From positions 28,581,504-28,645,503 of the forward strand of contig OZ037765.1 of assembly GCA_964035545.1 (NCBI GenBank): a DNA stretch of 64,000 bases, in the 5' to 3' direction. The position numbers and the translations under genes were made by a program. The stretch comes from Bugula neritina. Taxonomy: Eukaryota > Animalia > Bryozoa. The notes under the pieces were generated by a model. The model had not been told where the DNA came from. It saw only the letters and a list, made by a program, of their open reading frames with translations, and did no database searches. How positions within the stretch are numbered: position 1 is the first letter of the stretch; every line of letters starts with the position of its first letter. This document shows, piece after piece, positions 10,131-62,540 of this stretch.

Positions 10131-10197
10131 ATCAATAAAATTATTTTAAACACAAATGCCAGGCATTTCGTACATGATGTTTATTTATTTTAGAAAA

Positions 10198-35110: not shown

Positions 35111-38100
35111 ATGGCTGAAGTACCATCCTTGTTGTCAATGGATGTTAAATCTCCATTGGCCATGACTGGTGGCGGGGGTAATCTTGGGGAAGACTTTTTT
35201 GTCCGAGTTCGTGGCCTTCCATTTTCTGCTTCAGCTCATGAAATTGTGGAATTTTTGCATGGTGAGTAGTTTTTTTAACTAGACTATATATGTGCTCTGT
35301 AGGTTAAATGATGAACTGTATATACAGTTAGTTATTGTGATTTTTGCTAACATAGTGTAATGGATTTTAACGCTCTAGTAGTTATATCGCGTCACTATTA
35401 TAATTGACTTAGCGTAACTTTCTAAATACTGATTAACTGTTGTAATTATAACTAAGCTCTTAGCGTAATGATTGTGAATTGCCTTCCTATTTTTATTGTT
35501 TGTTTTTGAGTTACTGTAATAGTTTTTGGAGTTATGTTTCCCCGCCACTTTCTTTTTGCGAGATAATAATTAAGTATGTGAGCCGAAGCTCGGCCGAAAT
35601 CGAAGCCAAAGGTACGACTTTGGAAGGGTCTGCTCGAATCGGCTGAGTTTCGGACCCTCCAGTGGCGGGAAATTTTTGCAATGTATAAGGGCGAGCTTTT
35701 TCCAGTGCAAATCAGTTTCACACTGGAGCTCACCAAGGAAGGAACTAGATACAAATAAAGATCATCAGATTCAACTTTCAGAAGACTTTTTATTTCAACA
35801 AATAACAACATTGGCATGCAGACTACTTGGTCTATTTCATACAAACCCGTAAAATCATAACAATAGTAATGAACTGTACCTTTGCATTGAATTGACCTGA
35901 ATTAAATCCCTCAATGCAGCTCATCTACAGAGAGAAATACTTGTTATACTCTTATCGTTGTTACATCTAGATGTGCGAATTGTGGGTGGTGAAGCAGGAG
36001 TGACCTTTACATTCACCAGAGATGGCAGAGCAAGTGGTGAAGCATACATATGCGTACAAAGTGCACAAGATCAAGCTGTTGCTCTGGATCACAACAAAGA
36101 GCATATTGGCAATCGATATATTGAAGGTGGCTTTTAAATTCTATGCTCTCACTTTTTGGTACATGTAGCTCAACTCTGAGACTTAAGTACTGACTGTGAA
36201 TATTTTTGTGAATATTTTAGTTTTCGAAGCAAATAGAGAGGAGATGGAGTATGTTGTTAAAAAAAGTGGTCCAAATCCTGGCAATTCTACTGAAGGTGTT
36301 TTGCGGATGAGAGGTTTGCCCTTTGGGTGTAGCAAAGAAGAGATAGTACAATTTTTTGCGGGTATGGAATTTATGGTATTGTTTCCTACGTGGTGTGTTT
36401 TTTCAACTTTACAATTGCTGATCTCTATATGCTGATTCATATCACAGAAATCTTACTGCAAGTCTGAAACATTTCAATACTGGCCTGGCATAAAACAACT
36501 CTGAGCTGTATAATTCTCCGGCATCTCTGTATATCTTTTAGATGAACTTCAACTCATCAGCTACTAACTAACTGTGAATGTATCATTTACCCTTTCAGTA
36601 GGCTCAATGGGCTTATACTGGTATAATATTCGTGTTTGTTGTGTTGGTTAAATTGTGGCATGTGTATTTTATTTGGGAAGGGTATGAAATAGTGCCAAAT
36701 GGCATTACGATGACAACCGATCACCAAGGGAGGACTTCGGGGGACGCCTATGTTCAGTTCTCATCGCAGCATGTAGCGGAAAGGGCTATCACAGACAAAC
36801 ATACAAAGAGAATAGGGCACAGGTTGGTGGGAGCTGGGAGGAGGTCCGCGTAGATTTGTGTACAAGAGTGGGCTGTATAAGCAAGGTGGGATTGTGAGGG
36901 TTGGTTGGTACCAGGTCTGGGTTTGTCACTTAGCAGTCGACTGCATCTTTCCTTCAGTTGCACTTCTATATCAATATTTTGCATCATATTTTTCTGGATT
37001 TGGGAATTTCCAAGGCTCAAGGCAATGACTTACTAGCAGGTCTCAAAGTGATACATTCATAATTCATAATAATAAGCACAAGGAGTATAATGTGACGTGT
37101 AATATTCAAACATAAGTCACAAGAAAATAAGCTGAAATAGAACAATATTATAACATATAAGACAACTTCGTAATACAAAATTTGTTAGCTTAACAAAATT
37201 GGTGGTTGTCTGCACATGTCTACTCATAATGAGCTCTGTAAAGTATTGTAATTCAAAATTGTGTTTCTGATTACCTCGATTGTCATTATTAGTTTCGTAG
37301 TGTTTAGCTCACCAGGAATACTTTCAACACAGACGAGTGTTGGATACAGTGATTTGTAATTCTGCAGGTATATTGAGTTATTTCGGAGCACAATCATGGA
37401 GGCTCGACAAGCAGCTGTTGGGGGAAATGCAGGGGGCCCGCCTGGCCGTAGTAGGCCGATGAGGCCAGCTCCCTATGAAAGACCTGAAAGGTTCGGTGGC
37501 TCACGAGGGCAAGATTCCTACTTTCCACCTAGAGAGAGATATGGAGGTGGTGGCAGTAGTGGAGGGCATGGTGCAGGCGGTGGTCGATTCAGAGGTAAGG
37601 TATCTTGTTCATTGAGAGTTTGACACAACTCGCCTTATAGTGTGTGCTGTGTAACTCCTAACAGAATGTTAATGAAGTTTTACCAAGAGAAGTAGTTATA
37701 TTTGTGTAACTATTATGACTGAATGTTCTAGATTTTGGAGGTGATAGATACAACTCTGGTAGAGGAGGACGAGGGAGAGGGGGTCGAGGTGGCGCGGTGC
37801 GAGGAAGTAGATCAGGAGGGGGCAATAACGGCGCCGATCATTCTAGTGTTACTGGGCATTCAGTGCATATGAGGGGATTGCCTTTCTCTGCTAATGAACC
37901 TGTAAGTGTTCTGCGTTCCACTAACATGCTCATTGTATTCAGTCTAATACTATAAGTCTGATTTCTGAATCATTTGATGTTCTAAAGTTGTGTTTTGTTG
38001 ACTGAAACAAAAAATTAGGTTTTATGTTGCTGGCATACAGTGTGTTTTGTGGTATTTGATAGTGCAGTTATATTCATTATATCATCACCGTAAAAGATTT

Positions 38101-38722
38101 TGTCACAATGATATTCTGTTGTAAGGATATAGTGAGATTCTTCCACCCGCTGCCAGTGGTAGACGTTGTGATTGGTCTGAATGAAGATGGCAGAAAATCT
38201 GGAGAAGCTGATGTGGACTTTGAAACTCATGAAGATGCATGTGAAGCTATGAAAAAAGATAAATCAAATATGGGTAACCGCGGCCATTTCTTCTCCCATT
38301 TCATGTCTTCTAAGATTTTTGTCTCTATAGTCTATACATTATTTTGAAGTGCCTGCACAGAGCAGTCTAAACAGTTGAATACTATTGTTTCAGAGCACCG
38401 GTATATAGAGCTGTTTCTCAACTCCAGCTCTTACGGCGGTGGTGGAGGAGGGGGTATGCGTTTACAAGGAGGGGGATCCTTTCCTATGAGAGACAACTAT
38501 CATCCTTCACACCAGACTGGAAGACTTGGAGGCTCACACTATCAACCAGGGTGAGAATGTATAGCTTCTTGGTATCAGTCAGTCTAAGAACTTTATATGT
38601 TGTGGCAGTCACACTAACAAGCAGTATAACATATGGTGGTTGGCAGTACTGTTACTGCCATTTCTAAGAGTTGTGTAACTTGGTTTTCTGTGTTGAATAA
38701 TAATCTTTTCAGATCAGAATAA
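35111..38722 (+). CDS. HNRNPH: hnRNP F/H family protein (three qRRMs, Gly/Arg-rich linkers)
   Basis: Exons 35111-35261, 35971-36126, 36221-36361, 36681-36822, 37368-37594, 37732-37901, 38126-38273, 38394-38550, 38713-38722 (last exon uncertain); [68 protein letters not shown]. Confidence 0.93.
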
Positions 38723-41483: not shown

Positions 41484-42166
41484 GCCCACAAAAAGTGCTT
41501 GATAAACATGGGAAACCAGGAGATATTGCATCTAGTATCAAAGGATACGCTCTACCTCTTTCACCAACACCACTTTCTGGCATGTACAATATATATGGTG
41601 GCAAAACTCTACTCACTTTCAAGCTTGATCAAGATGAATCAAGTTTTTGTGATTTGCCAAGTGCTCAAATGTTTTGGGAAATGATAAAATTCTGGCTAAT
41701 TTTTACATGTTTAAACTTCGCTGCCTGCATGATTTATCAGTTACAAATAGTGAACATTTAAAAAACTGATCTTACCATACGCTCAAATGTCTTAGGAGAG
41801 GGTAACATTAAGGCTGGTTTTTACACTTTGTTGTCTGCGGGATTTATCCATGGCTACTGCCTCATGTGTTGCAAGTGAAATATTTCATTTTAATTCTTGA
41901 TAAAGACATTAGTATCCTCTGGTTTTGTTTTATTCACCAATGAAATGAGCTGGCTGAGTTCAGGTTGAATATACCAACTATTTAAATTTAACAGCATAAC
42001 ATTTGTTAAAATACAAATACAATGTCAAACAAACATACAAGAAAATCTGTTTCAGGGACTTCAACTTGGCCCCACAGAAGCCTCAAAATACTGGATATAC
42101 TGAATGCCAGCTCAGTATATCAATGCTATTAAAGACACCATCTTAGGGAAATGGGGAAGTTTGTAG
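41484..42166 (+). pseudogene. Partial UBFD1 pseudogene (3' exons) inside the inverted duplication
   Basis: KVLDKHGKPGDIASSIKG...TFKLDQDE is truncated at ~41640; the ERTQKIKMGS exon is missing; last exon 42056-42166 has TGG>TGA at 42101-42103. Confidence 0.9.
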
Positions 42167-42674
42167 AAATACCTAAGATGCTCCATAAGTGTATGTATGC
42201 TGATCAATTACAGTAACTAATGTTGATAATGTATCGATATTATAGTCATGGTATTTTGTGCACAGCAAAACCTGTGGGTTCTTCATTAAATGTTGAGGTA
42301 TTATTTATGTTTTGGTCTGTTTCTTGCGACACTTTTCAGTTACTTAAAAATTCTCTTGAATATAAAAATATGAAATATCATTTATTTTGCAAATAGAATC
42401 TAATAATCTCAATAAATAATTTAAAAAGTTAAATATATGTTTATAAAGTGAAAATTTAATTAATCAACAAAAATATGAAAATATCTGATGAAAAAGAATT
42501 AGTATCAACCAATACAGAAAAAACACTACAAGGAAGCACTTGAAAGACATGATTGACATATGGTAGTAATGAGAAAATCTGCTAATTGTTGATGTCAAAA
42601 CATTTTCTAATATTTAATAGATTACAATACAACATGTATTCAAAATATCAGCTGAAGTGATTATAGAGATGATG

Positions 42675-45106
42675 TCAGTCATACTCTGAGCCAATAGTAA
42701 TACTCATTTCACCAGGATGAATGTATGTGGAGTGATACCACATGTTTGTGTCCACCAGTACTGTAAGATAAATGAAAATCATCATCTGCATGCACATTGC
42801 ACAAATAATAATGTTAGCTTATAAACCCAAGGTTACCACACAATAATGCTTTGTAATTTCAAGCTGATCAAATACCTAAAGGCTGAGCATGTTTCTTTTA
42901 ATTAAAAGTTTCCACTACCTACAAAATGTATTTCTACATCCAAGGTTAAATATATTACATTATATAAAAACTACAGTTTCATTATAATTCTATTGACACT
43001 TTACCAGCAAATTTCATTCTAGTTTTTGTTAACTTACTGATATCACCTTTCTCCATGGTAGCATTCAGTGATTTACACACAGAATCACACTCAGGAGATG
43101 GTATTATTTTCCATGACTTTTTCCCAGCAATCATTGCTTGCCATGAGGGTCTTTGAACATAATCAATCTATAAGGCAATCACAGATAAGCTAAATCTGAG
43201 CATTCATTACAAATTTTATTATCTACAAGGAAAGGCATTTTGTGGAAAAAAATAATGAAAGGAATTTCGTTAAACAAATGATCGTCATCTTTCTAATTTA
43301 AATTTCTTAAAATAAGAAAATTTTCGAAAAATATATCGATTTCAATTATTATTATCATTCAAACTTGTCCGTGGATAAGTACCACCAAGTAGTAAATATA
43401 TTATATCCACCAGGGCAGCTGGGAGCAGTCTGAGCGTTGAGTCACCAGTAACAAACATCTTGAAAGAATGGGTTAACTTATAAGTATAGTAACAGCCAAA
43501 CCCTGGAGCTTAATTTAACCATTATCTAAAGTCTTAACACATATCAATTGTCAATATAAACTGTATGCTCTGAAGATGACCAAATAATTTGAGTTTAAAT
43601 AAATTAAGTGGTTCTGCAAGCTATTTCTAACAAAGGTTTTAACTAGAGTGGATATTATATTGTGCATAGGACAAGCAAAACTCTCACTCTCTCTCATTGG
43701 ATCTTGTAGAATCCTAAAGGGCCCACATAAAGGAAAAGTAGTTTAAGACAGTGACTGTGAACAATTTAAGATAACAATGGGAAAGAGCAGCAGGGACTGT
43801 GAAATCGTTCAACCCTCTACATACATGAATGTTAGCTCCACCACCAAATCCACCCATAAACAACCAGTCTAAATTGCTAGATTCTGAATCATCAGGGAGA
43901 AAGGTTGGAACGGTGTAATGGCGGCGGAGTTCCCTTGCCACATCTGGATGGCAGTTACTCCTTCAAATAGCATGAACAAGTTGAACACATGGTATTTCAT
44001 TATAAAACATCCAGTCATTTACACTTCATAAAGTTTGAATATTAAAACTATTTTAAAGTTTCAAGTTACAAATCTCAAAACTACCGCATTGCATGGAGTT
44101 AGTGAGTTGTATTGTATTGAGTTAACGAGCTCACATGAAATATGAGACTATCTCTTGTAGAATAAAAAGTGCTACATCCTTGTTAAACCCAGGCACAAAA
44201 ATTGTCACTTCAAGTACAAATGACTTTTGTGCCTGTTTTTGTTGTTGAGAATAAATGATTTCAAAAGTCACATTTTTTCATGTTAGTCTCCAGCACTCCT
44301 GCACCCAGCAAAAGACACCACAGAACACATGTAGTTCACTCTCTCACACAAATGGGTAGACAATGCAACAATTATGAGCTAAGCAACAAAATTCGTCAAC
44401 ATCAAGCAAATATTAAAAGCATTATCTATAATTAATGTTGGTTAGAATTTCACCAAAATATAAAAATAATAAAATTAAATGAGTTCACTTACCAGCCAAC
44501 ATACCACTCTGGCTGCCCAGGCGCCAACCTACTTTGTTCTTTTGGCATTTCAAATACTTCTGCTAAAGATAAAAAACTTGTCTTGTAAGGGAAGAATTGG
44601 CAACCTTCATCCACAGCTTCTAATGCACCTTCTGTTAGTTCGTAAAGATTTTTCAAATAGTCGAAACTAAAGGTGTGCAAAGCAGTCCAATTCTTAGCGC
44701 CATTCTTTACAAGCAGTGGAATGCCAGTGTAAGCATACTTTGAGAGAAACAGATCTTTAGTTAGGAGATTTCCATCTATAGTAGGAACCTGGTCCATATC
44801 TTTGCACACATCACACTGAACAGCAGGCCGTGAAACCTCCAGAGCTAGAAGGTTGTTACCCACAATGCATCTGGGATCTATAGTGTCATAGTATATAGCA
44901 AACAACATGGATATCATTAAAGTCACCAGATAAAAGACTACCATATATCTACATTTCCATATGCTACGATATGCTGGCAATGATTGACCAACAACCAACT
45001 TCTTGTACACTTGGTGTAAATCAGACTGAGAAATTCCATCCCTCAAAGCTTCTTGGTAGACATCTTTCAATTTCAAAGAAATATTTTCTTTATTTGATAG
45101 ACGCAT
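42675..45106 (-). CDS. Membrane-anchored JmjC/cupin oxygenase, copy B, 321 aa
   Basis: Exons 44493-45106, 43825-43960, 43038-43167, 42675-42760; same exon lengths as copy A, intact HxD...H triad (IH|IDYV; WYHST). Confidence 0.88.
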
Positions 45107-47679
45107 ACTAGGCGTGCTGTGCTACGATAACCTACAATATAGTTTTCAAGATTGGTTCAACAACGGTCTACTTTTTCACAAAAGATTTAACATCTTCTAC
45201 TCTTTAAACATCAACAACTAAATGTTCAAATGAGTTTTCTGTTTACTAAGTTTCTGTGATTATTGACATTACAATGTCTACTTCTTTTAACTAGCACTGC
45301 AAGACAAGCCCCGTAAAAATTACTAGTTATTTTTCGTACACAAAATGGCTATGAAACTATTGAATGTATACATATCATTCAACCACAAATTACTACTTGA
45401 TTGTAATATTAACAGACATATTATAATAACAGAAATTGGTTTATACTTCTAGTTTATTTAAAAGAAAAATCCTGCAATGAAAAATTAAAAAAGCAGGCAA
45501 AATAACAAACGACCACAATGATCATACAATTGTAGAAATAAACACTGCAAAAAACCCTGAATAGGTATTCAGCTATATTCATACGACCAAATGATACCAG
45601 CAAAAATACCAGTAGTCTCCCTAATAGATTAAATATAAATCAGCGCATTCCCTTATCATTTAGGAAGCTAATCTTACTAACATTAAAACTGCAGTAAATT
45701 TCAAATGACTTAGATCTGGCTTTCTCTCAGATCTGATTAATAGAAAACAAGTAAGTAACTTTCCTTATCAGAGCATTATAAGTAGCTGCTAATAATATAT
45801 GATGTAAAAACAGCCAGTAGTAAATAGGTAGCTAAAACATTAAATTAGAATTGGAATTAGGTTTTAGAAAAATAAAATTGTCTTCTATTAGACTTTTACT
45901 TAATGATAAGATTGTGTTCTAAGCTTATAATCAACTTGAAAAAATAAAATCCAAAAAATCTTACAATGCTACTATTTACGAAAAATTGTCAAGTATGCTA
46001 GTAATAACATTAAACATCTTTATAATGGAGGTTCAAATGTTATAACTTTTGCAATATAAAAATGGGTAACAAACACTTAAAATGGCTTTTTATTCATACA
46101 GGTATTACATAAAATTTAATTATACGGAATCCCAATCTTTAGTGAGCAAATCCATGGCTTTTTATCATTTCTAAGAAGCTTTGTAAACATAAAAATAGCT
46201 AAATAAAAATTATCAGTATTTGAGACGATTTGATACAGCATCAGTGGTACTATTTTTTTAAAGTAAGAATAAAATTGTATAAGAAGTCAGAAAGCACTAG
46301 AGACCAATTTTAGTGATGTGGAAATTTTTTCAGTAAAATTCTGATTGATGCAGAGCTTAGTTTAAAGTAAGATCTTGCAGTTGCTATTGTGTTTATATGA
46401 TCTTCATGTACATAATATCATGATAAGCAGATAACCATTATGAGAAATTTTTATCAAACTTGCAAAAGGTTTCATCTTGAATAAAATTTCAAAAATGAAA
46501 AATGTACATGTTTAGTTTAGTTTCTTCAAAATGGTTCTAAAAATGTACAGTCAAATAAACTAATACTCAATAAATATATACTAAAATATTTATAATGTTC
46601 TAGAAATTTGGTTAGATATAGTAAAGCCAGACTATTATAATCCATGCTGTCAGAGTAAGTACTTGTCAAGCACTTGCTGACTTCTCAAGTACTTGAAATT
46701 CTTTTACTTAGTCTTTGGTTAACAATCAGTATTACCTGGCTTGCCTTTCTCATTAACTTGACTTAAAAGTTAAAACTGTTTAATAACTAACTCAAACTGC
46801 GAGTACAAGTATGAAAAGCTGACGAGTTAAATGTGGTATTAACTAAATTCACTTCCAACATACTTTGTAGCTAGTAGTACTGGTAGTACTACTACTAGTA
46901 GACTTACAGTTACTGTTAGTGTTACTTACTACTACTACTAACCTTAGGCTTAAGATATATAAATTATTTGCTTAATATTATTCTTAGTATTACTATTACA
47001 GTAATACTATTACTATTAGTATTAGTATTAGTATTACCATTAGTAATTCGTGATTAACATATATTTTAATTATTTAATTTTTGAATAAATTAAATTATCA
47101 ACTATAAATACATTGCTATCACGAATAACAACCTTAACTCACTAGTTAGACTGCCGGGTGCAATACAACACCAGAAGAAAACTGTTCCACTTCTAGTATC
47201 ATTCCTGTGGTTAGGTTTCCTTTAAATGTAATCAATAAGAACGCAATTTTGTTTCGAACATGGCTATAAGCTGTACCAAGTTAGCGGTCACTCAGTGTAT
47301 TGGTTGGGAGATGTTTGTGGGGCGAAGTTTACACGCAGAGTGTTTATAGTTTATGCAAACTGTGCACTTTGTCACCCAAAATCTAATGCTGTTTCTAGCG
47401 ACATTCATTTGTTTCGCTAGTGAAACGTTGCCCACGAGCTTTATCGTCATGAACACGATAATAACGGCAATACTTGTTGAATTTAATATATCCTCCGTCA
47501 TAGTTATTGCACTAAACAAAGTGAGAACTCATACTATAGCGTTTATTTTTGTAAACAGCACGTGCAAAGCATAGCAAAAGGATAACTCTTTCGCTCTAAA
47601 TCGAAGTAGGACCTCACTATTGCAAAAAGTTGAAAAACTTAGTATACAAATACTTTAACTTCAAGTCTTTAATTTAGTC

Positions 47680-48430
47680 TTATGTATTATTAATATTATA
47701 GTTATATAGTAAGGGGTATTCTAATACTAGGAATAAGTACTAATTTACTTATAGTTATAGTTATACTCATAGTCATACTGATAGTGATAGTGATACTCCC
47801 AGTTTAGTACTAGTTATACTTATTCTTATAGTTATTGTTAATGTTATTGTTATATATACTAAGTCCAATACTAATAGTAATAGTAATACTAATAGTAATA
47901 CCAATAGTCATAGTGACTATTACTGATACTAAACTAAACGTAGGTAATACTTATACTAATACTAATACTAATAGTAGAGTGAGTAATAGTAATAGTAATA
48001 CCTACTTTTATCATTATCATTATGATTATGATTATCATTATGCTTATACTTAATCTCATAGTTATAGTTATTAGTTATACTCTAACTTATAGTTATGCCT
48101 TATACTCATAGTTGTAGATTATTAGATATTTATTGTCATGCTGGTGATCACAGTATGGGTATGAGTAACTGAGTTTGCTGAGTCTAATATTATCATTTAA
48201 GCTTAGTTTTTACCCTTATACTTATAGTCATAAGTCAAACTTAATGCTATACTTAACTTTATAGGCTATGCTTATGGCTATAGCAAAACTTAAAGTTAAA
48301 GACCTAAGTACCTGTGTTTACAACTACAGTCAGTGTCACATTCACATTGATTACTTGTTACTTCAATATAGTAATAATATAAGTAATACTAATAATGATA
48401 GACTAAATTAAACACTAATAGTAATAGTTT
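47680..48430. repeat. Degenerate (aatagt/ttatag/ttatac)n tract
   Basis: Visible hexamer periodicity upstream of the qRRM paralogue. Confidence 0.85.
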
Positions 48431-49363
48431 ATTTGGAATGCGCATCTGATATCTCTATGTTTTTAGATTTAATATTTGAAAAATGAGTGGTTTTATTTGC
48501 TTTGCCTGAAAAGGTAGAAAATGTAGGCTAAGAGTAAGTGTTACAAAGGGCAGTTTTTCATCTTTAGAAAAAAACTCTTTACTTTTGAGGTATAAAAGAA
48601 ATGCATAAAAATGACAAATCTGTAACGCTGCATTGGTGGATTAATGAATTTTTGGAGGTACTGCTTTCATTTTTATTATAATATAAGAATAATATTATGT
48701 TCAAATTCTCCAATTTGACGTTTACCTGTACATCATTAAACATACTGAATTGTAATCTAATGAATCAATCAATTATTTTGTTACTAAGTTGATGTAACTT
48801 TTCAGTAAATGTAAAAAAATAATAATTTCTTCATTTTTTATGCTTGCTATCTTGTTGGGGAAGTTTAATTATATAAAGTATGGAGCCATTTCTATCAAAC
48901 ACACACTTGTCAGCCAATATAATTTTCAATGTATGAATACTAGTAGCATATTATGTCACCAAGTTTTTATTGCATACTGTGTTTGAGGTTTTGTAAATTT
49001 ACACATAAAATGAAATACAGAAGTCACAATTGATGCAATTCAATTATGGTCACCAGTAGCAACATTATATGATGTATGTCTAGCGAAATATGTCTTCAGA
49101 ATTGGATTAATATCTCGTCCATTTGAGGTAGTAGTAGAAATATTCTAGCAGATTCTATTAGGCTCTTAAAACACCTTAGTTTTACAGATTTCAAGTGTGC
49201 TGCACTTTGAGTCAGTTTACTGCTACTATTTACTTTTATGTTTTTTCTATAATGAAAATACATTTAACTTATACACTAATAATCACGATTTTTTTTGAAA
49301 ATTAGGCATGTGCTTTATATTGGGAAATATAATATATAGTATTTATATTTTTAGGTTCTCATC

Positions 49364-52223
49364 ATGAGTTCAGCTAATCAGTTAGTTTCAAAAACAGTCA
49401 CAAGAACCCTGTTGGCAGTCTTTTCAAGTCGGATTTCTCATTGTGAGAGACGATTGTTTTGCAATAAATTCTTGTATCCCATCAGTCATGAGCAACCAAG
49501 TAAGTGGAAAACTAAACTAATGACATAAACTTGAAAGTTGTTCTCAGTTAGAGTTTTATTTATCCAATTTCTTGTCTTGTTGTTAGTTTTCAAGAACTTA
49601 TCTGGAAGACTTTCTGTTTCGAGTAAATTTTTACCCAGGTATGTATTATTTGCTGTTTTTCAGCCATAAATACATAATATGATGAAAATTAAGAAAAGTG
49701 CTGGTTAACTTCAGTAGCTAGAATAGAATATTTAAAAGAAACTTTTCTTTTAAATGGTGAGTGATTTTTTACATAAATGTTGGATAGTTTGTATTTATCA
49801 ATGTGGTTCAGTATAATCAAATTGTTTTGAAGTCAGATGCGAACTTTTGGAGTGTGAATGTTTGTATAATACCTTCAAAAATATTAGGATTTGTAATTCT
49901 TATTAATAGATAAACTACTTCATCTGGTTTTTTCACAGCTCTTGGTATTTTTGTAGATGCATTGCAATGTTCTCTGTTACTCATTTTATTAGGAATAATA
50001 AATTGGCTAGAATGATTATTTTTCTGAATTTATTGCTGTGTTTTTTTACTAGGAGTCTTCAAGAAAATAGACATTTCACATTTTCAATTAGCAAAATATA
50101 TAACTATGTACAATGCCTTTTGCTGTTTTTCTCAACAAAACTTTGAAACATTGTCGGAAAGATCAACAAAGATTTAAAAATAAAGAGCTCTGATTTTCGT
50201 TTTAGCCTTTCAAAGCGTTTCTATTCTGATGATGCCAAATTGAACTCAACAAATGAGCACTTCATCATCCTTCGGGGTATTCCGTTTGAAATGACAGAAC
50301 AGCATGTTGTTGATTTCCTAAAAGGTTTGGCTTATATCATTCAAACATTAAGCTCTCCTCAAGTTTCTTTTATTTTTCCATTAACTTTCAATATTTTGAA
50401 GGAAAAACAGTTTTTTATAATAGACTAATAACTGTTCTGCTACTAATGTACAGGTGAAGATGTTGAACCAGTCAATGGTGCCAAAGGAATAACATTTATG
50501 CTAAACCTATCAGGATTGAGGACAAGCACTACCTTTGTACAACTGAATAGTCGGAGTGATGTTGATAAAGCTAAACTTCTACACCACAAATACATGGGAG
50601 ATCGTTATGTAGAAGGTTTGTAGTCGTTACACAGAGGGTCGGTAGTGAAAAATTTGCCAACTTATCTACCCCTATATCAGGCTTCAATAATTATAATTGA
50701 GTTACATATTCTTATGTCGAAGGACCTTGGTTTTATTACAATTTGAAGTGTTTTTTGAGCCAATCTAAAACTAACTCAAAATGCACACTAAAGGTGACTT
50801 TTATGTATGTTTTGTGAGTATAATGATCGATATACTATATTATAGGCTTATAGCTTTCAGCAATCATTTATTGCCTAAAAGTGAGTGAAAGTGAAAAGTA
50901 GGATTTCTTGATTTTTGTATAAGAGTTCCTGATAGGTCAACTGATAGCAATTTGCTGATCTCCCTTCATGTTATACATATGATCTTATCTTGTGTTGAAC
51001 TGCGATTATAGATGTCGTGTATTTCATTACTTTCCTGGTTGAAATATAATATAGTACCACTTACTGCGTGTGCTAATTATGCATTAATATGGTATTACGG
51101 GCATCTTTCATTTCTTCCCTAGTGTTTAGATCAGACCTAGCCAACCTAGAAAAAGATCTTGTAAAAGCACCTGAACCTATCAGAAGTGCAACTGGGCACG
51201 CAGTTCACATGGTTTCTATCCCCCAGCACACCAGTCAAGAAGTTTGTATTAATTTTATTTAAATATTATCTATTTTACTTGAATAACAAGTCTTTATAAA
51301 AAAATTAATTGTTTGAATATTTTGAGCTAGCCTGGAGATGTGTTGTGCTTAGGTTTCAACACCTCCTATACACATGAGATTGTGGGAGCACTAGGGCCTA
51401 TTACTGTGTTTATTGGCTGGTAACTTTGTGGCAAGTTGCTTGTATTTCATGTCTTGCAGGACATAAAGCAATTTTTTGCACCTTTACAAGTTGCAAAAGT
51501 AGAGACACGACTAATAAAAAGACCGAATTGGCAGACACACAAAGCCTTTGTGGACTTCCACAGTCATGCAGATGCTGTGGCTGCTGTTGAAAAGACTAGA
51601 CAAGAAATTTGTAAGTTTTTTGTTTCAACTCCAAAACTTTAAAAATAGTAGAAATGTTAAATTTTATTCTTATTGATGTATGTAGAACATGATGCTGGTA
51701 TAATCTTTCCTTTAAATACAGGGCTTATACTATTGCAGTGAAGTTGAATTCATTGGTAGTTGTGCTCTCACGAATTGAGAATAAACTAGTGAGCAGGATT
51801 GGAAATTATTCATAATTGCATCTTTAATGAAACATTTTTGCTGAAATAAGTTCAGTATATTAGTTTCTGCTAGATTGCATAATTTCCTGAGTGTAAATAA
51901 TTATCTTATGCATGGTTTTCTCTGAGTCCAAGTTTGTAAATAATAGATTTAGTGGTACAGTTTCTTATTAAAATAAAGTTTAGAAATGTTTGGTGTAGCA
52001 AATGACTGTCATGAATTCTCAGTTTCAAGAGAATTGCTAAATTCCCGTATAAAATAAGCTTCGACACTGTTGAACTAATGACTCATATTGTCATATACTG
52101 AAAATTATACTTGTAGGTGAAATGAAAGTCACTCTGAAATTAGTTTCATATGATGGTACATGCACAGCATATAACCAAGAAGAGGATAGCATAGTTGAGA
52201 GTAAACCAGATGTTCAAGATTAA
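49364..52223 (+). CDS. Divergent hnRNP F/H paralogue with predicted mitochondrial presequence and two qRRMs (~281 aa; GRSF1-like)
   Basis: Exons 49364-49499, 49587-49638, 50206-50324, 50454-50615, 51123-51241, 51460-51610, 52117-52223 join in frame. N-terminal ~69 aa rich in R/K/S/L with 2 acidic residues, ending KRFY|SDD; FIILRGIPF...YMGDRYVEVFRS; TGHAVHM...DIKQFFAPL...AFVDFHSHADAVAAV. Confidence 0.82.
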
Positions 52224-52915
52224 AATTGGTCAATTCCCTTCCATTTTTTAAATAAAAGTAAACATGCCAAAACAGTTGCTCTAGTTAGTTTTATTTAATA
52301 ATAATCATTTTGTTTAATATTTTCAATTTAATCTCACCATTGACTATGTTTATTTTTTATTATTTCACAAATAAATACAGCCTAATTAGGCTAATGGTAT
52401 CATTTTATTACAGAAATAAACAACTATAAGACTACTCACACTTCTATATAATATACTTATAAGGCAGTCAGAAAAATAATGTATAGTTAGATTTTCAATT
52501 AGCAAAATTAATAAATAGAGTTGCCTGAATACTGTGTAACTCAACATAATAACCATTATCAGTTTTCAACAGCTGTTGGATGGGACAAAATATTTTGGTC
52601 TAACTTCTACCAAACCCTAAAGCTACTAGTGTATTTGTAGTGAGAAATCTTAAGCAAAATATGCATTGAGTTACTAACCACAAAATTGGCTACTACCATT
52701 GTTAGTTCTGAAGCAGAGAGAGCATGTGGCAAAAAGAATGGGGATAACCACAAGCTGGTTACATAGAGCCTACATAAATTGATGGTAACCCAAATTCAAT
52801 TCTAGAAAAGGGCTTATTTAAAAAACCCGCGAAGATGTGCACAAAAATTCTAGCAAATTTTCACTGGCTTCCCTTGGTTTGACATTTAAATATAGCACAG
52901 TAGTTGATAGAGATT

Positions 52916-55900
52916 TCATTGCTCAGTTCCATAACTTGTTAGTCTGCCCCAAGTCTCGCTGGCCATACTGCGAGAGCAAGCTGATATGGCCGTAAAAAGC
53001 TTTGCAAAACCAGTCTCTCTTGGTCTTTCCAGTCCTCGCATTAGACGCCTCTTCATCACCGCTACAAACTCCTTGTTACTTAATTTCTCATCATCTACAA
53101 TAATCACAAAAAGTAATTTACTACTAAAATTGAAGGTCTTCTAACACCTCCAACTATTTCTATCATTAGAAAGCTTGAGAATCACTCATTTTATTTTAAA
53201 ACAAAATTAAGTTGTTCATATCACTAGATTATACACGATCCAGGAAGGCAGTGCTGTCCAATAAATGTATTACTCATATCTAGCTTTACCTTTATAATAC
53301 CTTCTCTAACGATTTTTCTTCATAAAAATAATATTTTCAAGTTTAATAATATAATTACCAAGCTACAGCAATCTGTAAACACTATTCTTTCTCAAGACAA
53401 CCAATCCAAATACTTTCTGGCTTTTGCAAGCTTATTCAATGCACAAGGCAAAAAAATGAAAACCCAATTACTTTAAACATTATCTCGATTAAAACTCCTA
53501 CAACTCCTACACCAGTGCTACATGTTGACCATCAAGTTTTAGTATTATTTCAAGACAACTCATGACAGTACCACCAGAAACTAATGAAATAAAACAGCCC
53601 GAGCTAATCTCCTTTTTCAATGAGTGAAAAAACTTACTGTTGTCATCAAAGATAGCAAATACTACGTCCACAAGATGGTCGGTTAGTTGAACTTTAGCAA
53701 CAGTTTTGGCCACGTGCTTTAGTGTGGGCTTATCTATTGCGGCCCCTGCCACATGATAAAATGTCAAGGCGGTGTCTATTTCATTTATACTCTTCAAGAC
53801 TTGAGCAAAATCATAATATTCTTGGAAGGTGATGCCCTGCAAATAATCATAATTCAATACACTTATATTCTATTGCATGTAGAGCTCAGATATTTCTTAA
53901 ATCTAAGCGTACATCACTTGTATAATTTTCAGCAAAACTTTTTGCTATGTCAGAGCAAAATTTGTAAATTCTATAAAAGAAAGTTCAATATGCTAAACAA
54001 ATTATTGGGAAGCAGACTATTTTCCTTCCAACATACTTAGAAGGTAAAAAATGAATTATTTTTTAAGAAAATAACTCCAAAATTTATATAAATAAACTTA
54101 TGGCACAACTATATTACAAGATATATTATCACAGGTCCATAAATATTAATTGATATACTACTGATTTATAAAGCATTTTACTTTTCACTAAAAATTAATT
54201 AGTTTACACCAAACTTCTGTTAATAAGTGTCTCTATTGTGTCTAGTTGTAGGATGACTATCGTGGTAACACTCACTATTAAAATCCAACAATTTTGTGCT
54301 TTCAGGGAAATTCACTCAATATATAGCATTATATTACACTACCAAGACTCAAAAATGAATACCTTTTAACAGATATTCAACACAGTTTGCTACTAAAAAG
54401 AATTTTATATTGTTCTATTTTAACCAGTTAATTTTATAAAATATTTGACAATTACATGAAGACTAGTTGATCAGCTCTTAAGAGTTGTGCTCTACTAGCA
54501 AGAATTGGAAAAGATAATAGAACCGAATGTTTCAAACTTTCTTATAATTAAATTGTTTCCTCACTCGTCTGCACACGCTAATTCTCTTCTGGTCTGAGAC
54601 GCCAGCATAGAGTAAAATCTGATTGGCGAAATCTCTTTCGCTAATCGTCTCGGCATCTCCTTCCTGTTCAGCTACTTCGTGAAACTGTCAAACAACATTA
54701 TAGAATTCATAGCCCAGCTAACTATAAACTACAATATGAATGCAAGAAGACATCAAGGTGTATTAGAGATAAGGATGTATATCTAATCAAAAGGAAACGG
54801 AATTTTGTGCTGTAACTCTTTAAACTGCTGCAAAGCATAGTTATAGTTAAAACTTTATCTTTAGACAAAAAATAACATTTTCCGCTAGTGCAGAGCTAAA
54901 ACACAATGCTTACATGAAATCGTTTCTAAAAAGCCAATGATATTGATATACCTGCAGCAGTTGGAAAGAAACACGCAGATTTTTCACGAGACAAATAATT
55001 TGAGTGGTATAAAGACTCAAACTGTGTAGATCAAAACTTGATTAAAATTATTTATAAGTTTCCAGCTGACTGGTTTTTGACTTGAAGAACATATATCAAG
55101 ACAGAAGAAAATAGCATACATCGTTGATTAAAAAATTGATATATTGTGAAATTGTGTTATAATCTTTTAATCTTTATCTCCCCTGTAAAGTTAAATGAGT
55201 ATAGAGTTGTCTCACCTCTATCCACAAGATCTCGTCGTGAATATCTTTGTGAAACTGAATAAACTTTTGGTAAGGTAACTTCTGATCAAGTTGGTCACCA
55301 AAAAAGTACTTGCTGAGAGCGCCATTAGAGTCAGTTTTGATGACATTACCAGTAGTTGAATGATCTCTATGCCTTTGACCCACAGTAGTCCTTGACCTAA
55401 TTATCGACTGAACCTAAAGAAACATTATAAACATGAAAAGCTAACTACGTGATATGGTAAACAAATGGATATCAACAACCAATGTATTACAGCAATAACA
55501 CAATGAGAGAAACTTAGTCTTCTACGCCTTTCAGTATTTTTGTTTGTAAATGCATTTAATACTGCTCACTCTTTCATATTCAGCTTGATCCAAATTTCCA
55601 TCTCCATTGTCATCAAACATTTTAAATGCCAACTCAAACTGTTTCGGAGGAGCTACAAAAATGAAACTAATGACACAATAAAACTTTGTCACAACCAAAA
55701 ATGGCTCACTATCATTTGAAGCCTGCAGAGTAGAGCCTACAATGGTATTAGAAAAATCTGGCAAAACTTCAAGAAAGTCCTAATTGATAATTTCTTGTGA
55801 AAGAGTATCTTTTAAATAAGTTCGAATGCAGACTAGCTAGTTAAAGTTACTGATGTTTAGTTCGAACAAGAAACTGTAACAGAACTTCCACTATACTTTA

Positions 55901-58900
55901 GAACATTAATGACACAAATTCTAAATATAATTCATTAAACAAAATGATAACACATGAGCTCTTAACTTTTAGTTATGAATATATTACTCAAGAGTTGGAC
56001 ACTATAGGAGATTGAAAAGACATGTTGACTACTTTTGGAAAAAATGTTGCCGCAGCCAATTTTATGACTCAGCATTGAAAGTGAGAATGATAAGATTTCC
56101 CATAATAGAACTTACTTGATAGTAGAGTTAGAAGAAGGATATAGTCTGAGAAAGATATGAGACCATGTGTCTCAAGATGGTAGAAAATGCTGTTTTTCCT
56201 CAACTTTAGCGATGAATCCTATAAGATTACGTATATTACTATAGTACAGTAAAGTAACAATGTATGGTATACATGTATATTTGACATGGACGCACACAGA
56301 GAGAGTAATATTGCAACAGATCAGGCCATGTACAAGTAGAAAGAATATCATCTTATTAAGAAAGCGTAAGCATTTGAAGAACATGTACAAACTAGCGGGT
56401 GGAAATTATGACAGGTTACAGAATGAAGTGCCGAGCTGGAGGTACAGTGCATCAGCCTGAGTATGCAACTTCAAGTTACATGTTTAGAGGACAACTCCGT
56501 ATAACATATTTTATAGGATATTTGAAAGAGAGGCGCCAGGCGAGATTTCAATCTGCAGAATTCGGACACCAAACACCTCAGGCTAGTAGCCAGTAAATCT
56601 AATGGTATTACACATGCGTGAATAGAAGCCTGGACAGAGAACAACCTAAAAAACTAGACTAACAAAAATTCCAGTATCTTATGTTTATATACTGCACAGA
56701 AAGGATTTAATATGAAAAATTCCCACAACTGATTTATATGAAATGGCATTTACAAGTTAGAAATATCAATGGAAGGGTAATTACAGTGTATAAAACTGTC
56801 AACATAATATCAATAGAAAATTAGTATTATATGCTGTGTATAAATCTAAACAATGTGGAATATATATCAACTATTTACTTAACTAAACACGTGTCAAGGC
56901 AATGCACACATGCATATGATTGGGTGAGTTCTAAATGTATGTCACATTGTTATTAATGTAGCCATAACCAACAACTGCTGTAAGTTGAGCATTAATTAAA
57001 TTCAAAAGAACATTTCTCTATTACAAGAAAATAATAATTAGAGAGAATAATTTGATATCATTACACGGCTGATGTTATATTATGTTATTGTCTGTATCAT
57101 GGTATAAACTTTGCCAGACCTACAATGGTGATCAAAATGATGACAAGGTTACGATTTATATTGTTATTTACTGATTTGGTGATCCAAGGGTTCAAACCCC
57201 ATTATAAGCAAATGGGGTTTGAACCCTTGGATCACCATTAATAAATTATAATTTCACATTTGAAAGAGATATTTTTGTCCTGTTCAATGTCCTATTCAGA
57301 TATCTACACAGATAATGATTGCATGCAAATTTACAAAAAAAACCTCCAGCAATAAATGAGCAGCTTACTAATATGATAGATTTAGCAGAATAAAGCTGCC
57401 GTTAGTTTGGAGCATCAAACATTATTCTAGTGAGGAGCTACAGAAATATCATTTGTTTAAGAAATTATATTACCATATAATATGGTCTACTAATTAAGTT
57501 AGCAATGTATAGTAATAAGTTGTCCTAGGCGATGTAGAGCAGGTAGCACACCACTAGATACAACTACACGAGTAAAAGCCTCCATTGGCATAATAACCTC
57601 GAATTCTAACATCAACTCTAAAGGGAGGGGGCCACCACGCATCAAGTGAACAATCATTCAAAAGAAGTCAAGAGGGTCAATATGGTGTATACAAGCGCGT
57701 TAGCCAAAACTAAGCACCGCACAAAAACCCAGATTTCTTTAAGACAAAAACATTGTTGCCAAATTATGCAATACAAGAGTGTTACTGTCGCCAGTTCTAC
57801 ATCAAACTAGTATTATTAGAAAATGCTCTGCCTATGGTAAGCAAGTGGGTGATTTCAGTGGTCACAAGAAATCCACAATACAACCATATTCAGCAATGAT
57901 TGGCACAAACTAAAGCTGATATAAAGAGCCACTTAATTTATTAGTATACAGTAACCGTATTACCACCTTATACAGGGAATCCTTGAGCTAAAATGTACAG
58001 AAAAAAAACCTGATATCTCAATATGAAAGAACGAGATAAGCATATAACTGGGTTACTCTTACACTGTTGGTTTAACTGAATTCTACATTCTATCTCATGC
58101 CATTAAGTGATACTATGTCACTTAACCATATAGCAAGTTTTTATTAAAAATGGTGATGAGTAGTAGTCACATTGAATTGAAAAAGTGATGACCAGAAGAT
58201 TTACTATTGATAACATGTCTTTAATATGTAAAATATATGAAAGCTTACAGCTTAAAGCTGTAAAAGGGTTTATATTAAGCCTCCTATTCTCACAACTGGG
58301 CAGTGCTGATACAAAGGGTCAGATAATAGAGCTGAAGCTGTGAGACTGTAGAACTAATATATTATTGCGGGGAGTAAGTACTGTGAATTATAACAGAGCC
58401 ACTAGAAACACACTGTCAGCAGACTAGTTATGAAATTAGAGTGTGTAAATAATGATAATGGTGCACCTTACCACTGACAAAGAGTCGACCTGTAACACAC
58501 AACATGCATGGTTTAAGAACAGCATTACTTTATAGGAGAAACTGTCAACTCAATTCAAACTTCATGTCATTTCAGTTGTCTCAGTAACACAAAACAGAAT
58601 GTGATAATATGTCAAGCGTTGGTTTATAGCACACACAAACACTATGTTTCCACGGCTATGACTGCTCATTATATTAGAATTTAGATGGATTGAAAAAATA
58701 CAAGGTTCAATGACCCCCTCCAGAAAAGGCAACTCCAAATAAACCAGTGCATTAACTCCGCCCCCAATTATAAGCAACAGATGACGTCAACGCATAATGT
58801 AAACAAACATGGCTAACATTGGTTTAGTTTTAATCTCTGCTGTTTTTCATTATACATTTATTACTGTTAAATTAAATTTATTACACACCAAAATTTAGAC

Positions 58901-61107
58901 CTGTATTATTTCTGGTAATTTCAAGAAATTATTAAATATATTACGTGTGCATATGTGTAGGTTTAGCAATTTAGATGAAAAACAATAAGCCAAAATCTAT
59001 TGAGTTAAACATGTTAGAAATTAAGACACACGTCAGTTTTAAGCTTTGACTGATTATTATAATCATTATTTACAATCTTTAATTGTTTGCTGTCAAAACT
59101 GTTGACCCCTGTCTTTTCAATAGTATTAATTAAGCAATAGCAACCTGCTCCCATAAGCACTGCAAAAAGCCCTCCGAGTTTATTAATTTACTAAAGCAAG
59201 CTAGCACATGCAGGTTAAAGTCTCATTCTAACACAACCACTCCTATTGGTTGAACGATACAGATGAATCGCTAAATGGAAACATAGTGCACGAGTTTACT
59301 AATGCCTTATCAAACTATTAGGTTCTGAGACAATTTAAATGACTTAGGTTTGAATTGAGGTGACAGTCACTTTGAAAACGGTTACATATATACACAGAGG
59401 TGTAGCCATACTTCCGGGACATTATTTTACATGGGACACCTTCATCTTTCACATCATCCACAGCAGTAGATGATAGTTTGTAATATAAAGAGATAGAATG
59501 TAACAGTGAGCTATACATATCTATTCACTAGCCAAGCTACCTCTTGCTTTACATTGTCACTTTAGTTAAACATTCAACCAGGTCTTGCATTTAGGGGAGA
59601 CAGTAATTATAAGGTAACACAACTCATATTAAAATACTATATTCTTTTACCTCTGGATCAAACTTCTTGAACTTATCTAGCCCATATTCTACAACATAGT
59701 ATATATCAAATACTAACCAATGATTCTCGTAAGGGCAGATAACTTTTACATTACAAATCAAATAACTCATTAATTACGGATTTCATACTGGTACTTTGAA
59801 AGCATTTTAATGATATAGGTGTAGATAATAAATAGTTCACCTAAAATATGTGTAATTACTGTTGATTTCTAATTATTAAGCTGCCCTATCACAGTTGTGA
59901 AATTAAAAATCAAAATTAGTAAGGATTAAATATGATATTAATCTACTCAGGTTTCGATAGCAATAAACGACGTCTTTTTCTTTAGTAAGTGCAAGTTCAA
60001 TTGATTTAGATACAATGATGTTTGACATTGCAAGATATAAGCTGTTTTCCTGGTAATCACATTGACTAAAAAGTAGTAAAAAATCATCAGCTAATCAAAT
60101 GACAGAAAATATCAGATGCACCCAATATGTTAGCAAACATTTATCCACAAAGGTAAGGGTAGTGGTTGACTGCCCCTCACCCTCAGGCTGCAAGGAGCCA
60201 GGCATTAGAGACCTGACAAAGTCTTCAGGTGTCATGTATATCTCATGATTTCCATCCTCATGCTTCACCTTCAGAGTGGCAAAGTATCGGAATATCTTGT
60301 CGGGTGTAGAATAATTACGAATTCTATTCTCATATTCCATAATCTGTCAGAATAGACAACCACCAATTACCAACCATGTTGGACATAAGAAAAACAAGTA
60401 TAAACTAATAGCAGATATTATATATTAGAATACACACTCGTTTTTCCCGAAATGTTGTTTTCCTCTTCTTTTTCACTTCTGCCACAACCATTTCTTCTTC
60501 ATCGTCCTTTTGGGAGTCAGCAGCACCAACAATTTCTTTTTCTCGGGCCCCGACATCTATATCTAACCATTTAATGAAGGCAGTCCCTCTGCAAAGTCAG
60601 AATGTCAAGCTGTACTCATCCAGCAAAGTTTCAATAACACAGTATTATCCACAGCAGTGAAAACAAAAATTGTTTCAGTCACAAACGCGTGAAGACAAAC
60701 TAATTAAAACTACAAAAAATTAAGATCATTATGTTTTTTACTCGTGCCAACTAGCATATAAGTGCCCAAATAAAATAACACGGGGATAGAATGAAATCAT
60801 TAGAGGCAGATCAGTTGCAAAAACAAATCATGTATAAAATAATGACTTACTTGAACAAAATTAGCGTTGCAGTTCCTATCAGAAAACACGTGTACACTCG
60901 TTGGAGAAAACTGTTTGGCTTCGCTTTCTTTTGTTGAGAAAAACCATAGTATATACTTTTCCCGGAAGTTGATGGAGAAGCAGAAATGGTTCTAATTGCT
61001 GTAAGTTGATATGCGCTGTTGGTGAAGTCATAAACTTTTGTATGAGTTCGGCCTCTGGAGCACACAACACTCACAGAAGATCTCCATAAGGCCAATTTGC
61101 TAAGCAT
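52916..61107 (-). CDS. MICU1: Mitochondrial calcium uptake protein 1
   Basis: Exons 60851-61107, 60438-60588, 60181-60343, 59651-59688, 56116-56218, 55570-55652, 55216-55413, 54538-54684, 53638-53836, 52916-53094; presequence, KKKRK polybasic stretch, [35 protein letters not shown]-hands [14 protein letters not shown] and [24 protein letters not shown]. Confidence 0.95.
57177..57237. repeat. Perfect 27-bp inverted repeat with 7-nt loop in a MICU1 intron
   Basis: TGGTGATCCAAGGGTTCAAACCCCATT-ataagca-AATGGGGTTTGAACCCTTGGATCACCA. Confidence 0.92.
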
Positions 61108-61419
61108 TCTTAACTTCAAATGCTACAATATAATATATGGCACATGGTGGTGATTATTCAACATGGATGCTAGATTTGATACGGATGCTGAGACACCTTA
61201 AACTAGTAACTACACTTGTAACATGACACTGGTCAATGGTGTTGGATTTTATTTCTTGTACATACTGCAACTTAAAACACAAATGCTTCCTGAGTACATT
61301 TATAAGTACTTATAAAACCTCAATAAAAAATAATGTTTCATACAAGTTCAAGTGATATATGAAATATGAAATAAATGAAATATTTGGAATCATAACGATA
61401 AACTATCAATTAGAGGCAT

Positions 61420-62540
61420 ATATACTGTTATTACTATTAGACTTAGTATTACTATTACTATTATTATTAGTTCAATTATTACGCTCACTCTTTCTATTAG
61501 TATTAGCATTACTAACTAAGACATTTACTATTAGTATTACTATAAGTATTACTAATAGTAATACTAATAACATTATTAATACAAATAGCAACACTAATAG
61601 TAATATTAAAAGTAATACTATTATTGTATTATTAATACTAATAGTAATTCACTGATAGTAATTGAGTAATTACCAAGTATAATAGTAAATGTAATAGTAA
61701 CACTGATAGTGATAGGCTAATACTGTAATTTAATAGTAATACTATTAACTATAGTCATAATAGTGATAGTCTATATTTTATAACATTTACATTAACTTCA
61801 ACTTAAAGTAATAATTAACTAATTAAACTATCGCTATTCACTATAACTATGAGTATTACTATCAGCATCATTATCAGTATGTCTACAGACGCACTCACAG
61901 TCATAGTGATAGAGTCTATAATCTATAGAGTCTAATACTAATAGAGCCAGTTAGTGTTACTGTTAGTGTCCGTGTTAGATAAGACACTACAATAATTACA
62001 TTTACTGATTAGTGTGATTACTATGAGCATAACAGTGTAACTATCACTATAAGTATAAGTATAACATTAACTATAAGTATAAGTAGAAAGAAGTATACTA
62101 TTAATTATAACTATAAGTATAAGTATAGCTATAAGTTATAAGTATAACTATTACTATAACTATAAGTATATAACACTAACTATATAACTATAAGATAATA
62201 ACTAATAAGTATATTGTTATTAAAGTATAACTAATACTAATAGTATTACTGTAATACTAATAGTAATTAGTAATAGTAAATGTAATACTAATAGTAATAC
62301 TAATAGTAATAGTAATACTAAATACTAATAGTAATAGTAATACTAATAGTAATAGTAATACTAATAGTAATACTAATAGTAATACTTGATACTTATACTA
62401 ACTTAGTATGAATATTGCATTAAATAACTAAAATCATTATGCTTCAGTATAACAGCATGACAATCACTATTAGTATAATTTCTAAATTATTAGTATAAAA
62501 TTGAAGTATAGCTATAATTATTTTACTTTTAGCATAAGAT
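61420..62540. repeat. Degenerate (aatagt/aatact/ataagt)n tract
   Basis: Visible hexamer periodicity upstream of the MICU1 first coding exon. Confidence 0.85.

What the first reader, a model, noticed from the sequence alone, without database searches (positions are those of the whole stretch)
49364..52223. A local hnRNP F/H duplicate that appears to have gained a mitochondrial presequence: possible independent invention of a GRSF1-like protein
Seen: a 7-exon gene about 11 kb downstream of hnRNP F/H on the same strand. Four intron positions and phases match the neighbour (FLK-G| vs FLH-D|, RYVE| vs RYIE|, TSQE| vs ANEP|, QEI-C| vs SNM-E|). The middle qRRM and all Gly/RGG regions are gone. New 5' exons encode ~69 aa rich in Arg/Lys/Ser/Leu with only two acidic residues, ending KRFY|SDD, an R-3-type processing motif. 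The first qRRM keeps RGIPF and RYVEVF; the last has lost them (VSIPQ, MKVT). Established: qRRMs bind G-tracts; GRSF1 is the mitochondrial family member, described as vertebrate-specific, and helps the SUV3-PNPase degradosome resolve G-quadruplex mtRNA. Inference: this invertebrate lineage separately built a mitochondrial G-run-binding protein from its own hnRNP F/H.
Basis: partly seen in the sequence, partly recalled or inferred. Interest (0 to 1): 0.86.

Follow-up and report, generated by a model that had tools for sequence, protein, structure and literature searches.

The report
Bryozoan mitochondria-targeted hnRNP F/H duplicate
A moss animal (bryozoan) copied the gene for a nuclear RNA-binding protein and added what looks like a mitochondrial import signal, independently of the similar event that produced vertebrate GRSF1; import is untested, and the protein probably does not do GRSF1's job of unwinding G-quadruplex RNA.

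Summary
The gene is real. In the Bugula neritina complex it has seven exons and 281 codons, and RNA contigs from four studies join all exons. A trans-spliced leader 9 nt upstream fixes the start codon. Watersipora subatra has an orthologue and a further paralogue directly behind its own hnRNP F/H, with homologous basic, acid-poor N-terminal exons.

The fourth is diagnostic. It lies four codons earlier only in bryozoan hnRNP F/H and the duplicates. Trees agree, although AU tests do not reject a GRSF1 grouping (p 0.10, 0.08).

Mitochondrial import is likely (about 0.8) but untested. The G-quadruplex part is not supported: the mitogenome has no canonical G4 motif, and the G-tract-binding residues are incomplete in Bugula and degenerate in Watersipora.

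Best reading: a second, independent recruitment of an hnRNP F/H copy to mitochondria, as a remodelled two-RRM RNA-binding protein under purifying selection (dN/dS 0.13). An earlier scan note (s1-481163) had already reported trans-splicing on other genes of this genome.

The parts
49353..49363 (+). Splice acceptor (AG at 49353-49354) that receives a roughly 22-24 nt spliced leader, followed by 9 nt of 5' UTR
   Evidence: mRNA contig L012 carries 22 nt before 49355 that are not encoded within about 10 kb upstream but match a multicopy leader-plus-GT-donor element on C8; in-frame TAA inside the leader
49364..49499 (+). Exon 1: start codon and first 45 residues of the presequence-like extension; phase-1 intron follows
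   Evidence: same phase in Watersipora orthologue
49587..49638 (+). Exon 2: residues 46-62 of the extension; phase-2 intron follows
50206..50324 (+). Exon 3: predicted MPP/Icp55 R-3 site KRFY|S (50213-50227) and start of domain A (qRRM1-derived, loop 1 RGIPF)
50454..50615 (+). Exon 4: body of domain A, to RYVE; loop-3 Arg and the loop-5 upstream basic residue are replaced
51123..51241 (+). Exon 5: fusion exon, 5' part like hnRNP F/H exon 3 and 3' part like exon 6, marking the loss of qRRM2 and the Gly-rich linker; ends at the bryozoan-type phase-0 intron
   Evidence: fusion origin is inferred from the flanking phases and similarity
51460..51610 (+). Exon 6: body of domain B (qRRM3-derived, remodelled, family motif KAFVDF)
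52117..52223 (+). Exon 7: last strand of domain B, family motif SY.G.[CA]T.Y, acidic tail, stop
35111..38554 (+). Parent gene: canonical three-qRRM hnRNP F/H (8 coding exons, 431 aa as modelled; 3' end not checked by RNA)

Best explanation
Origin (well supported): hnRNP F/H was duplicated in tandem in an ancestor of Bugula and Watersipora. The copy lost qRRM2 and the Gly-rich regions by an internal deletion and gained two upstream coding exons once. Targeting (inferred, about 0.8): the roughly 69-residue basic, acid-poor extension is a cleavable presequence. The protein enters the matrix through TOM/TIM23, MPP cuts after R67-F68 and an Icp55-type peptidase removes Y69, leaving a 24 kDa two-RRM protein. 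Function (inferred, about 0.7 given import): it binds single-stranded mitochondrial RNA as an accessory factor for processing, stability or translation. Domain A keeps part of the qRRM loop surface. Domain B has lost it and instead carries a conserved Lys/Phe pair on beta-3, a loop Trp and a new C-terminal motif, pointing to a new binding mode rather than GGG encaging.
For: Splicing and expression; start codon fixed by the leader. Orthologue XP_067948759.1 at 37% identity, plus a third paralogue, directly behind Watersipora hnRNP F/H, with identical intron phases 1,2,1,1,0,1 and alignable N-termini (score 22 against -25 +/- 10 for shuffles, 0 of 2000). Derived qRRM3 intron shared by four bryozoan hnRNP F/H genes and four duplicate B domains, absent from barnacle, shark hnRNP H and fish GRSF1. 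Tree: duplicates plus bryozoan hnRNP F/H 95/85, 100/100 in one reduced set. Another bryozoan has hnRNP F/H about 200 bp from the MICU1-like gene with nothing between. Net charge of the first 40 residues is +5 to +7 with 1 acidic residue, like fish GRSF1 and the MICU1-like neighbour; none of 113 hnRNP F/H proteins reaches +4 with at most one acidic residue. dN/dS 0.13 in the RRMs (p 4e-5) and 0.63 in the extension. Both domains fold as RRMs (pLDDT 78, best match Glorund qRRM1, Z 13.9, rmsd 2.2 over 89 residues).
Against: No localisation experiment and no TargetP/MitoFates run. At 69 residues the extension is longer than the usual 20-60 (PMC7723863). AT-rich non-coding DNA gives such a charge profile in 5.5% of draws. 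The third Watersipora paralogue has no clean R-3 motif. AU tests do not reject duplicate plus GRSF1 (p 0.096 and 0.083); with the window protein alone support falls to 53/100; lineage-specific residues split 6 to 7. RNA binding is not shown, and the mature protein is slightly acidic (pI 5.8). No other lophotrochozoan was sampled.
Confidence: 0.57

Rival explanations
1. True functional analogue of GRSF1: mitochondrial, binds G-tracts, melts G-quadruplexes and helps SUV3-PNPase degrade G-rich antisense RNA.
For: The long protein-coding frames of the mitogenome lie on one strand with GC skew -0.164, so antisense RNA would be G-rich (96 GGG runs against 62 in shuffles). SUV3 and PNPase domains are in the genome. 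Bugula domain A keeps the Arg, aromatic and Glu positions mutated in GRSF1 by Pietras et al. (PMC6028389).
Against: AT 70.8%; zero four-tract G3 motifs on either strand even with loops to 30 nt; only two G4Hunter windows. The loop-3 Arg and loop-5 basic residue of the qRRM consensus (PMC5449602) are replaced in Bugula domain A; each Watersipora A domain lacks at least one of the three key residues; all B domains lack them.
Confidence: 0.12
2. Not mitochondrial: a cytosolic or nuclear RNA-binding paralogue whose N-terminal extension is a disordered, basic by-product of exonised AT-rich DNA.
For: 5.5% of null peptides have the charge profile; dN/dS of the extension is not significantly below 1 (p 0.33); a language-model search of residues 1-76 gave no usable hit.
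Against: The profile is kept in three genes of two genera despite low identity, an R-x-Y|[SC] motif sits at the same aligned place in two, the Gly/RGG regions are lost, no K-[KR]-x-[KR] signal was found, and relaxed sequence with conserved charge is typical of presequences.
Confidence: 0.17
3. Mitochondrial, but acting through protein contacts (for example as a mitoribosome or RNA-granule subunit) rather than as a sequence-specific RNA binder.
For: Canonical qRRM contacts are eroded while domain B is strongly constrained (dN/dS 0.07); RRM proteins of a Toxoplasma mitoribosome structure match the same profile (9i05 chain Xk).
Against: Domain B gained an exposed Phe and Lys at RNP1-equivalent positions in 4 of 4 copies, which suits RNA contact; no partner evidence.
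Confidence: 0.09
4. Ancient orthologue of vertebrate GRSF1, retained in bryozoans and lost elsewhere.
For: NCBI's automatic name is GRSF1 (KAF6041428.1); the Atlas feature search ranks GRSF1 first for the Watersipora protein (0.94); AU p 0.08-0.10.
Against: Derived intron shared with bryozoan hnRNP F/H only; GRSF1's presequence is one exon ending in phase 0, against phases 1 and 2 here; fish GRSF1 lies beside a RUN-FYVE gene, not hnRNP F/H; GRSF1 groups with vertebrate hnRNP H in the concatenated trees (87/89 with one environmental row, 87/80 and 49/83).
Confidence: 0.05

Closest known systems
Vertebrate GRSF1 (G-rich sequence factor 1)
   Same: hnRNP F/H-derived qRRM protein, basic acid-poor N-terminal extension, loss of Gly-rich regions; three ancestral introns in common.
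   Different: Two domains (qRRM1 and qRRM3) instead of three; different presequence exons; different qRRM3 intron; different neighbours; G-recognition residues eroded; mitogenome G4-poor. Pietras et al. (PMC6028389) describe GRSF1 as vertebrate-only and the only mitochondrial qRRM protein, having run localisation predictions for just three non-vertebrates.
hnRNP F/H / Glorund family
   Same: Direct parent; qRRM fold with C-terminal helix on domain A (best structural match Glorund qRRM1); four shared introns.
   Different: About 31% identity to its neighbour; qRRM2 and Gly/RGG regions gone; N-terminal extension gained; domain B remodelled.
ESRP/fusilli
   Same: qRRM domains; present separately in this genome at C1:3.58 Mb.
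   Different: Separate locus and separate branches in the domain tree.
General pattern: relocalisation of a duplicate by de novo presequence gain
   Same: Presequences arise easily from arbitrary N-terminal sequence (review PMC4585086, citing Lemire et al. 1989).
   Different: I found no description of such a case for a qRRM protein outside vertebrates in the paper searches.

Membership tests
GRSF1 | Three qRRM domains | tested here: not met
   Two domains, of qRRM1 and qRRM3 class
GRSF1 | One clade with vertebrate GRSF1 in a protein tree | tested here: inconclusive
   ML trees join the duplicates to bryozoan hnRNP F/H (95/85, 100/100, 53/100); AU p 0.096 and 0.083 for the GRSF1 grouping
GRSF1 | Shared gene structure (qRRM3 intron position, presequence exon) and neighbourhood | tested here: not met
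   one fish GRSF1 gene examined
GRSF1 | N-terminal presequence-like segment (Arg-rich, acid-poor, amphipathic, R-2/R-3 site) | tested here: met
   Sequence features only; criteria from PMC7723863
GRSF1 | Import into the mitochondrial matrix | not testable with these tools
   No predictor or experiment available
GRSF1 | G-tract contacts (Arg, aromatic, Glu) in every qRRM | tested here: not met
   All three present only in Bugula domain A (residues from PMC6028389)
GRSF1 | G4-rich mitochondrial genome as context | tested here: not met
   0 G3 four-tract motifs, AT 70.8%
GRSF1 | Cooperation with SUV3-PNPase | not testable with these tools
   Domains of both found in the genome; interaction untested
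hnRNP F/H qRRM family | RRM fold of qRRM type and descent from hnRNP F/H | tested here: met
hnRNP F/H qRRM family | Full loop consensus: RGLP[WFY], (R/K)-x5-RY[VIL]E[VIL]F and a basic residue in loop 3 (PMC5449602) | tested here: not met
   Domain A partial (His for the upstream basic residue, Leu at the loop-3 Arg position with Arg one residue later); domain B absent
hnRNP F/H qRRM family | Gly-rich/RGG low-complexity regions | tested here: not met
   0 RGG, 3% Gly

The most novel reading that the evidence does not exclude
Bryozoans independently repeated the origin of GRSF1, and the protein works with SUV3-PNPase to clear G-rich antisense mitochondrial RNA even though the mitogenome cannot form canonical G-quadruplexes. 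G4 pressure would then not be what drives qRRM proteins into mitochondria.
Probability: 0.15. Interest if true: 0.8.

Novelty: new variant of a known kind. Interest (0 to 1): 0.56.

Why it matters
The standing account is that GRSF1 is the only mitochondrial qRRM protein and arose because vertebrate mitogenomes became G4-rich (PMC6028389). A second, separately dated recruitment from the same parent family, in an animal with an AT-rich, G4-poor mitogenome, gives a natural comparison: it can test whether G4 load explains such recruitments and how a qRRM changes its binding surface afterwards. It also shows that the database name GRSF1 for the Bugula protein is a best-hit label, not orthology. The excitement is limited because presequences arise easily and neither import nor RNA binding is shown.

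Tried and rejected
Shared introns as proof of local origin: rejected for three of four, which are ancestral. An alternative last exon at 51722 and an alternative exon 3 acceptor at 50053: both hit early stops, and RNA shows neither among the listed joints. A cis 5' UTR exon near 47300-47600, my first reading: not found; the extra bases are a leader. Origin of exons 1-2 from another locus: single copy in the genome. Return of domain B to a canonical RRM: Pfam RRM_1 scores are no higher than for the parent's exon (19 against 19 bits), so only the residue-level observation stands. Lineage-specific residue counts: uninformative, 6 to 7. Metagenome scan for further orthologues: 18 loci, all ordinary qRRM proteins. 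Atlas search of the N-terminus: blank. Placing the duplicate-free bryozoan L014 as an outgroup: unresolved, so it may show loss rather than the ancestral state. RUN-FYVE neighbour for vertebrate hnRNP H: not within 10 kb in shark, two other look-ups failed. Recalled Drosophila CG11726 and Toxoplasma mL182 leads: nothing useful in papers. I ran four trees containing the duplicates and two AU tests; all are reported.

Full report
Observation. The seven exons given under parts join into 846 nt and 281 codons, with GT-AG introns of phases 1,2,1,1,0,1. RNA contigs from four studies show all six joints, and single contigs of 954 and 1466 nt span the gene. The 1466-nt contig encodes a 284-aa protein already in the database (P0019), whose cluster includes KAF6041428.1, auto-named GRSF1 of Bugula neritina. 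The window's non-coding DNA is only about 71-90% identical to that assembly, so the window is probably a sibling lineage of the B. neritina complex (inference); RNA support is therefore from a close relative, not the same animal. The three extra residues come from a 9-nt indel at the end of exon 1. Between the two alleles dN/dS is 0.13 over the RRMs (6 non-synonymous, 12 synonymous; p 4e-5) and 0.63 over the extension.

Start codon. The mRNA has 22 nt before the acceptor at 49353-49354 that are not encoded in the roughly 10 kb upstream. A nearly identical sequence, followed by a GT donor and a conserved hairpin-forming tail, occurs in about 15 near-full-length copies on contig C8, with diverged copies on C3 and C5; Rfam has no match and I found no clear Sm site. 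I read these as spliced-leader RNA genes (inference). The leader holds an in-frame stop, so ATG 49364 is the first AUG and NCBI's ten extra residues are probably a modelling artefact.

Relatives. Watersipora subatra XP_067948759.1 (457 aa, 37% identity) lies directly behind Watersipora hnRNP F/H and is followed by a third paralogue of 237 aa. Its first six intron phases equal those of the window gene, including the two inside the extension, and its domain pair is internally repeated. The two extensions align far better than shuffles (0 of 2000), so the extension was gained once, before the genera split. A metagenome fragment (L007) holds a further domain-B exon. In another, unidentified bryozoan, hnRNP F/H ends about 200 bp from the MICU1-like gene that also follows the duplicate in the window; whether that is the ancestral state or a loss is unresolved.

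Origin. Domain A is of qRRM1 class and domain B of qRRM3 class; exon 5 looks like a fusion of parent exons 3 and 6. The phase-0 intron of qRRM3 is informative: it precedes the FF dipeptide in barnacle, shark and fish GRSF1, but lies four codons earlier in all four bryozoan hnRNP F/H genes and all four duplicate B domains. This derived shared state places the duplication after a shift in the lineage leading to bryozoans; other lophotrochozoans were not sampled. GRSF1's presequence is a single exon ending in phase 0 and its neighbour is a RUN-FYVE gene. The concatenated tree gives duplicates 100/99 and duplicates plus bryozoan hnRNP F/H 95/85; reduced sets give 100/100 and, with the window protein alone, 53/100. 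AU tests do not reject a GRSF1 grouping (p 0.096, 0.083), branches are long, and GRSF1 is represented only by teleosts. Taken together I put independent origin at about 0.9.

Targeting. The first 40 residues have net charge +5 (Bugula) and +7 (Watersipora) with one acidic residue, comparable to four fish GRSF1 proteins (+5 to +7) and the MICU1-like neighbour (+6); 113 hnRNP F/H proteins average -3 and none has +4 with at most one acidic residue. The third paralogue has no acidic residue in 44. An N-terminal helix is predicted at low confidence, and there is no strongly hydrophobic segment. R-x-Y|S in Bugula and R-x-Y|C in Watersipora fit MPP plus Icp55 processing (PMC7723863). Against: the length is at the long end, AT-rich DNA yields the charge profile in 5.5% of null draws (with the motif, 0.1%), and presequence-like segments arise easily (PMC4585086). 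No predictor could be run. I estimate import at about 0.8.

Function. Both domains fold as RRMs (mean pLDDT 78; best match Glorund qRRM1, Z 13.9). G-tract recognition needs RGLP[WFY], (R/K)-x5-RY[VIL]E[VIL]F and a basic loop-3 residue (PMC5449602). Bugula domain A keeps loop 1 and RYVEVF but replaces the other two positions; each Watersipora A domain lacks at least one of the three residues mutated to abolish GRSF1 binding (PMC6028389); all B domains have lost them. B domains instead share Lys and Phe on beta-3 (4 of 4), a loop Trp (3 of 4) and SY.G.[CA]T.Y (3 of 3), with dN/dS 0.07. The mitogenome (C321, 15,248 bp) is 70.8% AT, has cox1 and eleven other long frames that I recognise as mitochondrial genes on one strand, GC skew -0.164, and no four-tract G3 motif on either strand. 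The most likely role is a matrix RNA-binding accessory factor with a changed specificity; a GRSF1-like G4 role is possible but unlikely (about 0.12).

Verdict. It is not a member of the GRSF1 family, but resembles GRSF1 in origin and probably in location. I found no paper describing it. Novelty: new variant of a known kind. Interest 0.56.

Noticed in passing
window 49353-49355; G000 C8 11.85-13.14 Mb (L053-L056, L064-L066), also C3 and C5: The mRNA carries a roughly 24-nt leader that matches a multicopy leader-plus-GT-donor element with a conserved tail: candidate spliced-leader RNA genes. No Rfam match; three papers held the search terms and the one I opened does not list bryozoans among trans-splicing animals.
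   Followed up: partly
window 19404-23550 and 41490-45149: Inverted segmental duplication (88-96%) flanking hnRNP F/H; one copy lies between parent and duplicate and includes a partial UBFD1-like gene and a second copy of a 205-codon first exon.
   Followed up: no
window 4269-9477: Element with identical 300-bp terminal repeats and gag/pol-like frames, probably a recent LTR retrotransposon; observed only.
   Followed up: no
window 13226-16204 (-) and 1-957 (+): Intronless 992-codon frame with DUF294 nucleotidyltransferase-like and TPR matches, with an inverted 90% copy at the window start.
   Followed up: partly
window about 52900-61119 (-): EF-hand gene that I recognise as MICU1-like; tail-to-tail with the duplicate, and directly beside hnRNP F/H in bryozoan locus L014.
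   Followed up: partly
G000 C6:11174072-11175412; C17, C73, C214, C4: A full cox1 copy on a chromosome (possible nuclear mitochondrial insertion) and other cox1 sequences that look like they come from other organisms in the assembly.
   Followed up: no
P0003, P0055, P0122 (teleost GRSF1) and P0007: Several fish GRSF1 proteins have internally repeated qRRMs (7, 5 and 4 domains), paralleling the internal repeat in the Watersipora protein.
   Followed up: no
PDB 9i05 chain Xk and 9g6k chain Lz (mL182): RRM proteins of mitoribosome structures (9i05 is Toxoplasma) match the family profile at E about 1e-9 to 1e-8; possibly another qRRM-like protein in mitochondria.
   Followed up: no
window 33700-34950, 46850-48450, 61400-62500, 9600-10150: Six-base-periodic AT-rich tracts flank probable promoters, as noted earlier for this genome.
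   Followed up: no
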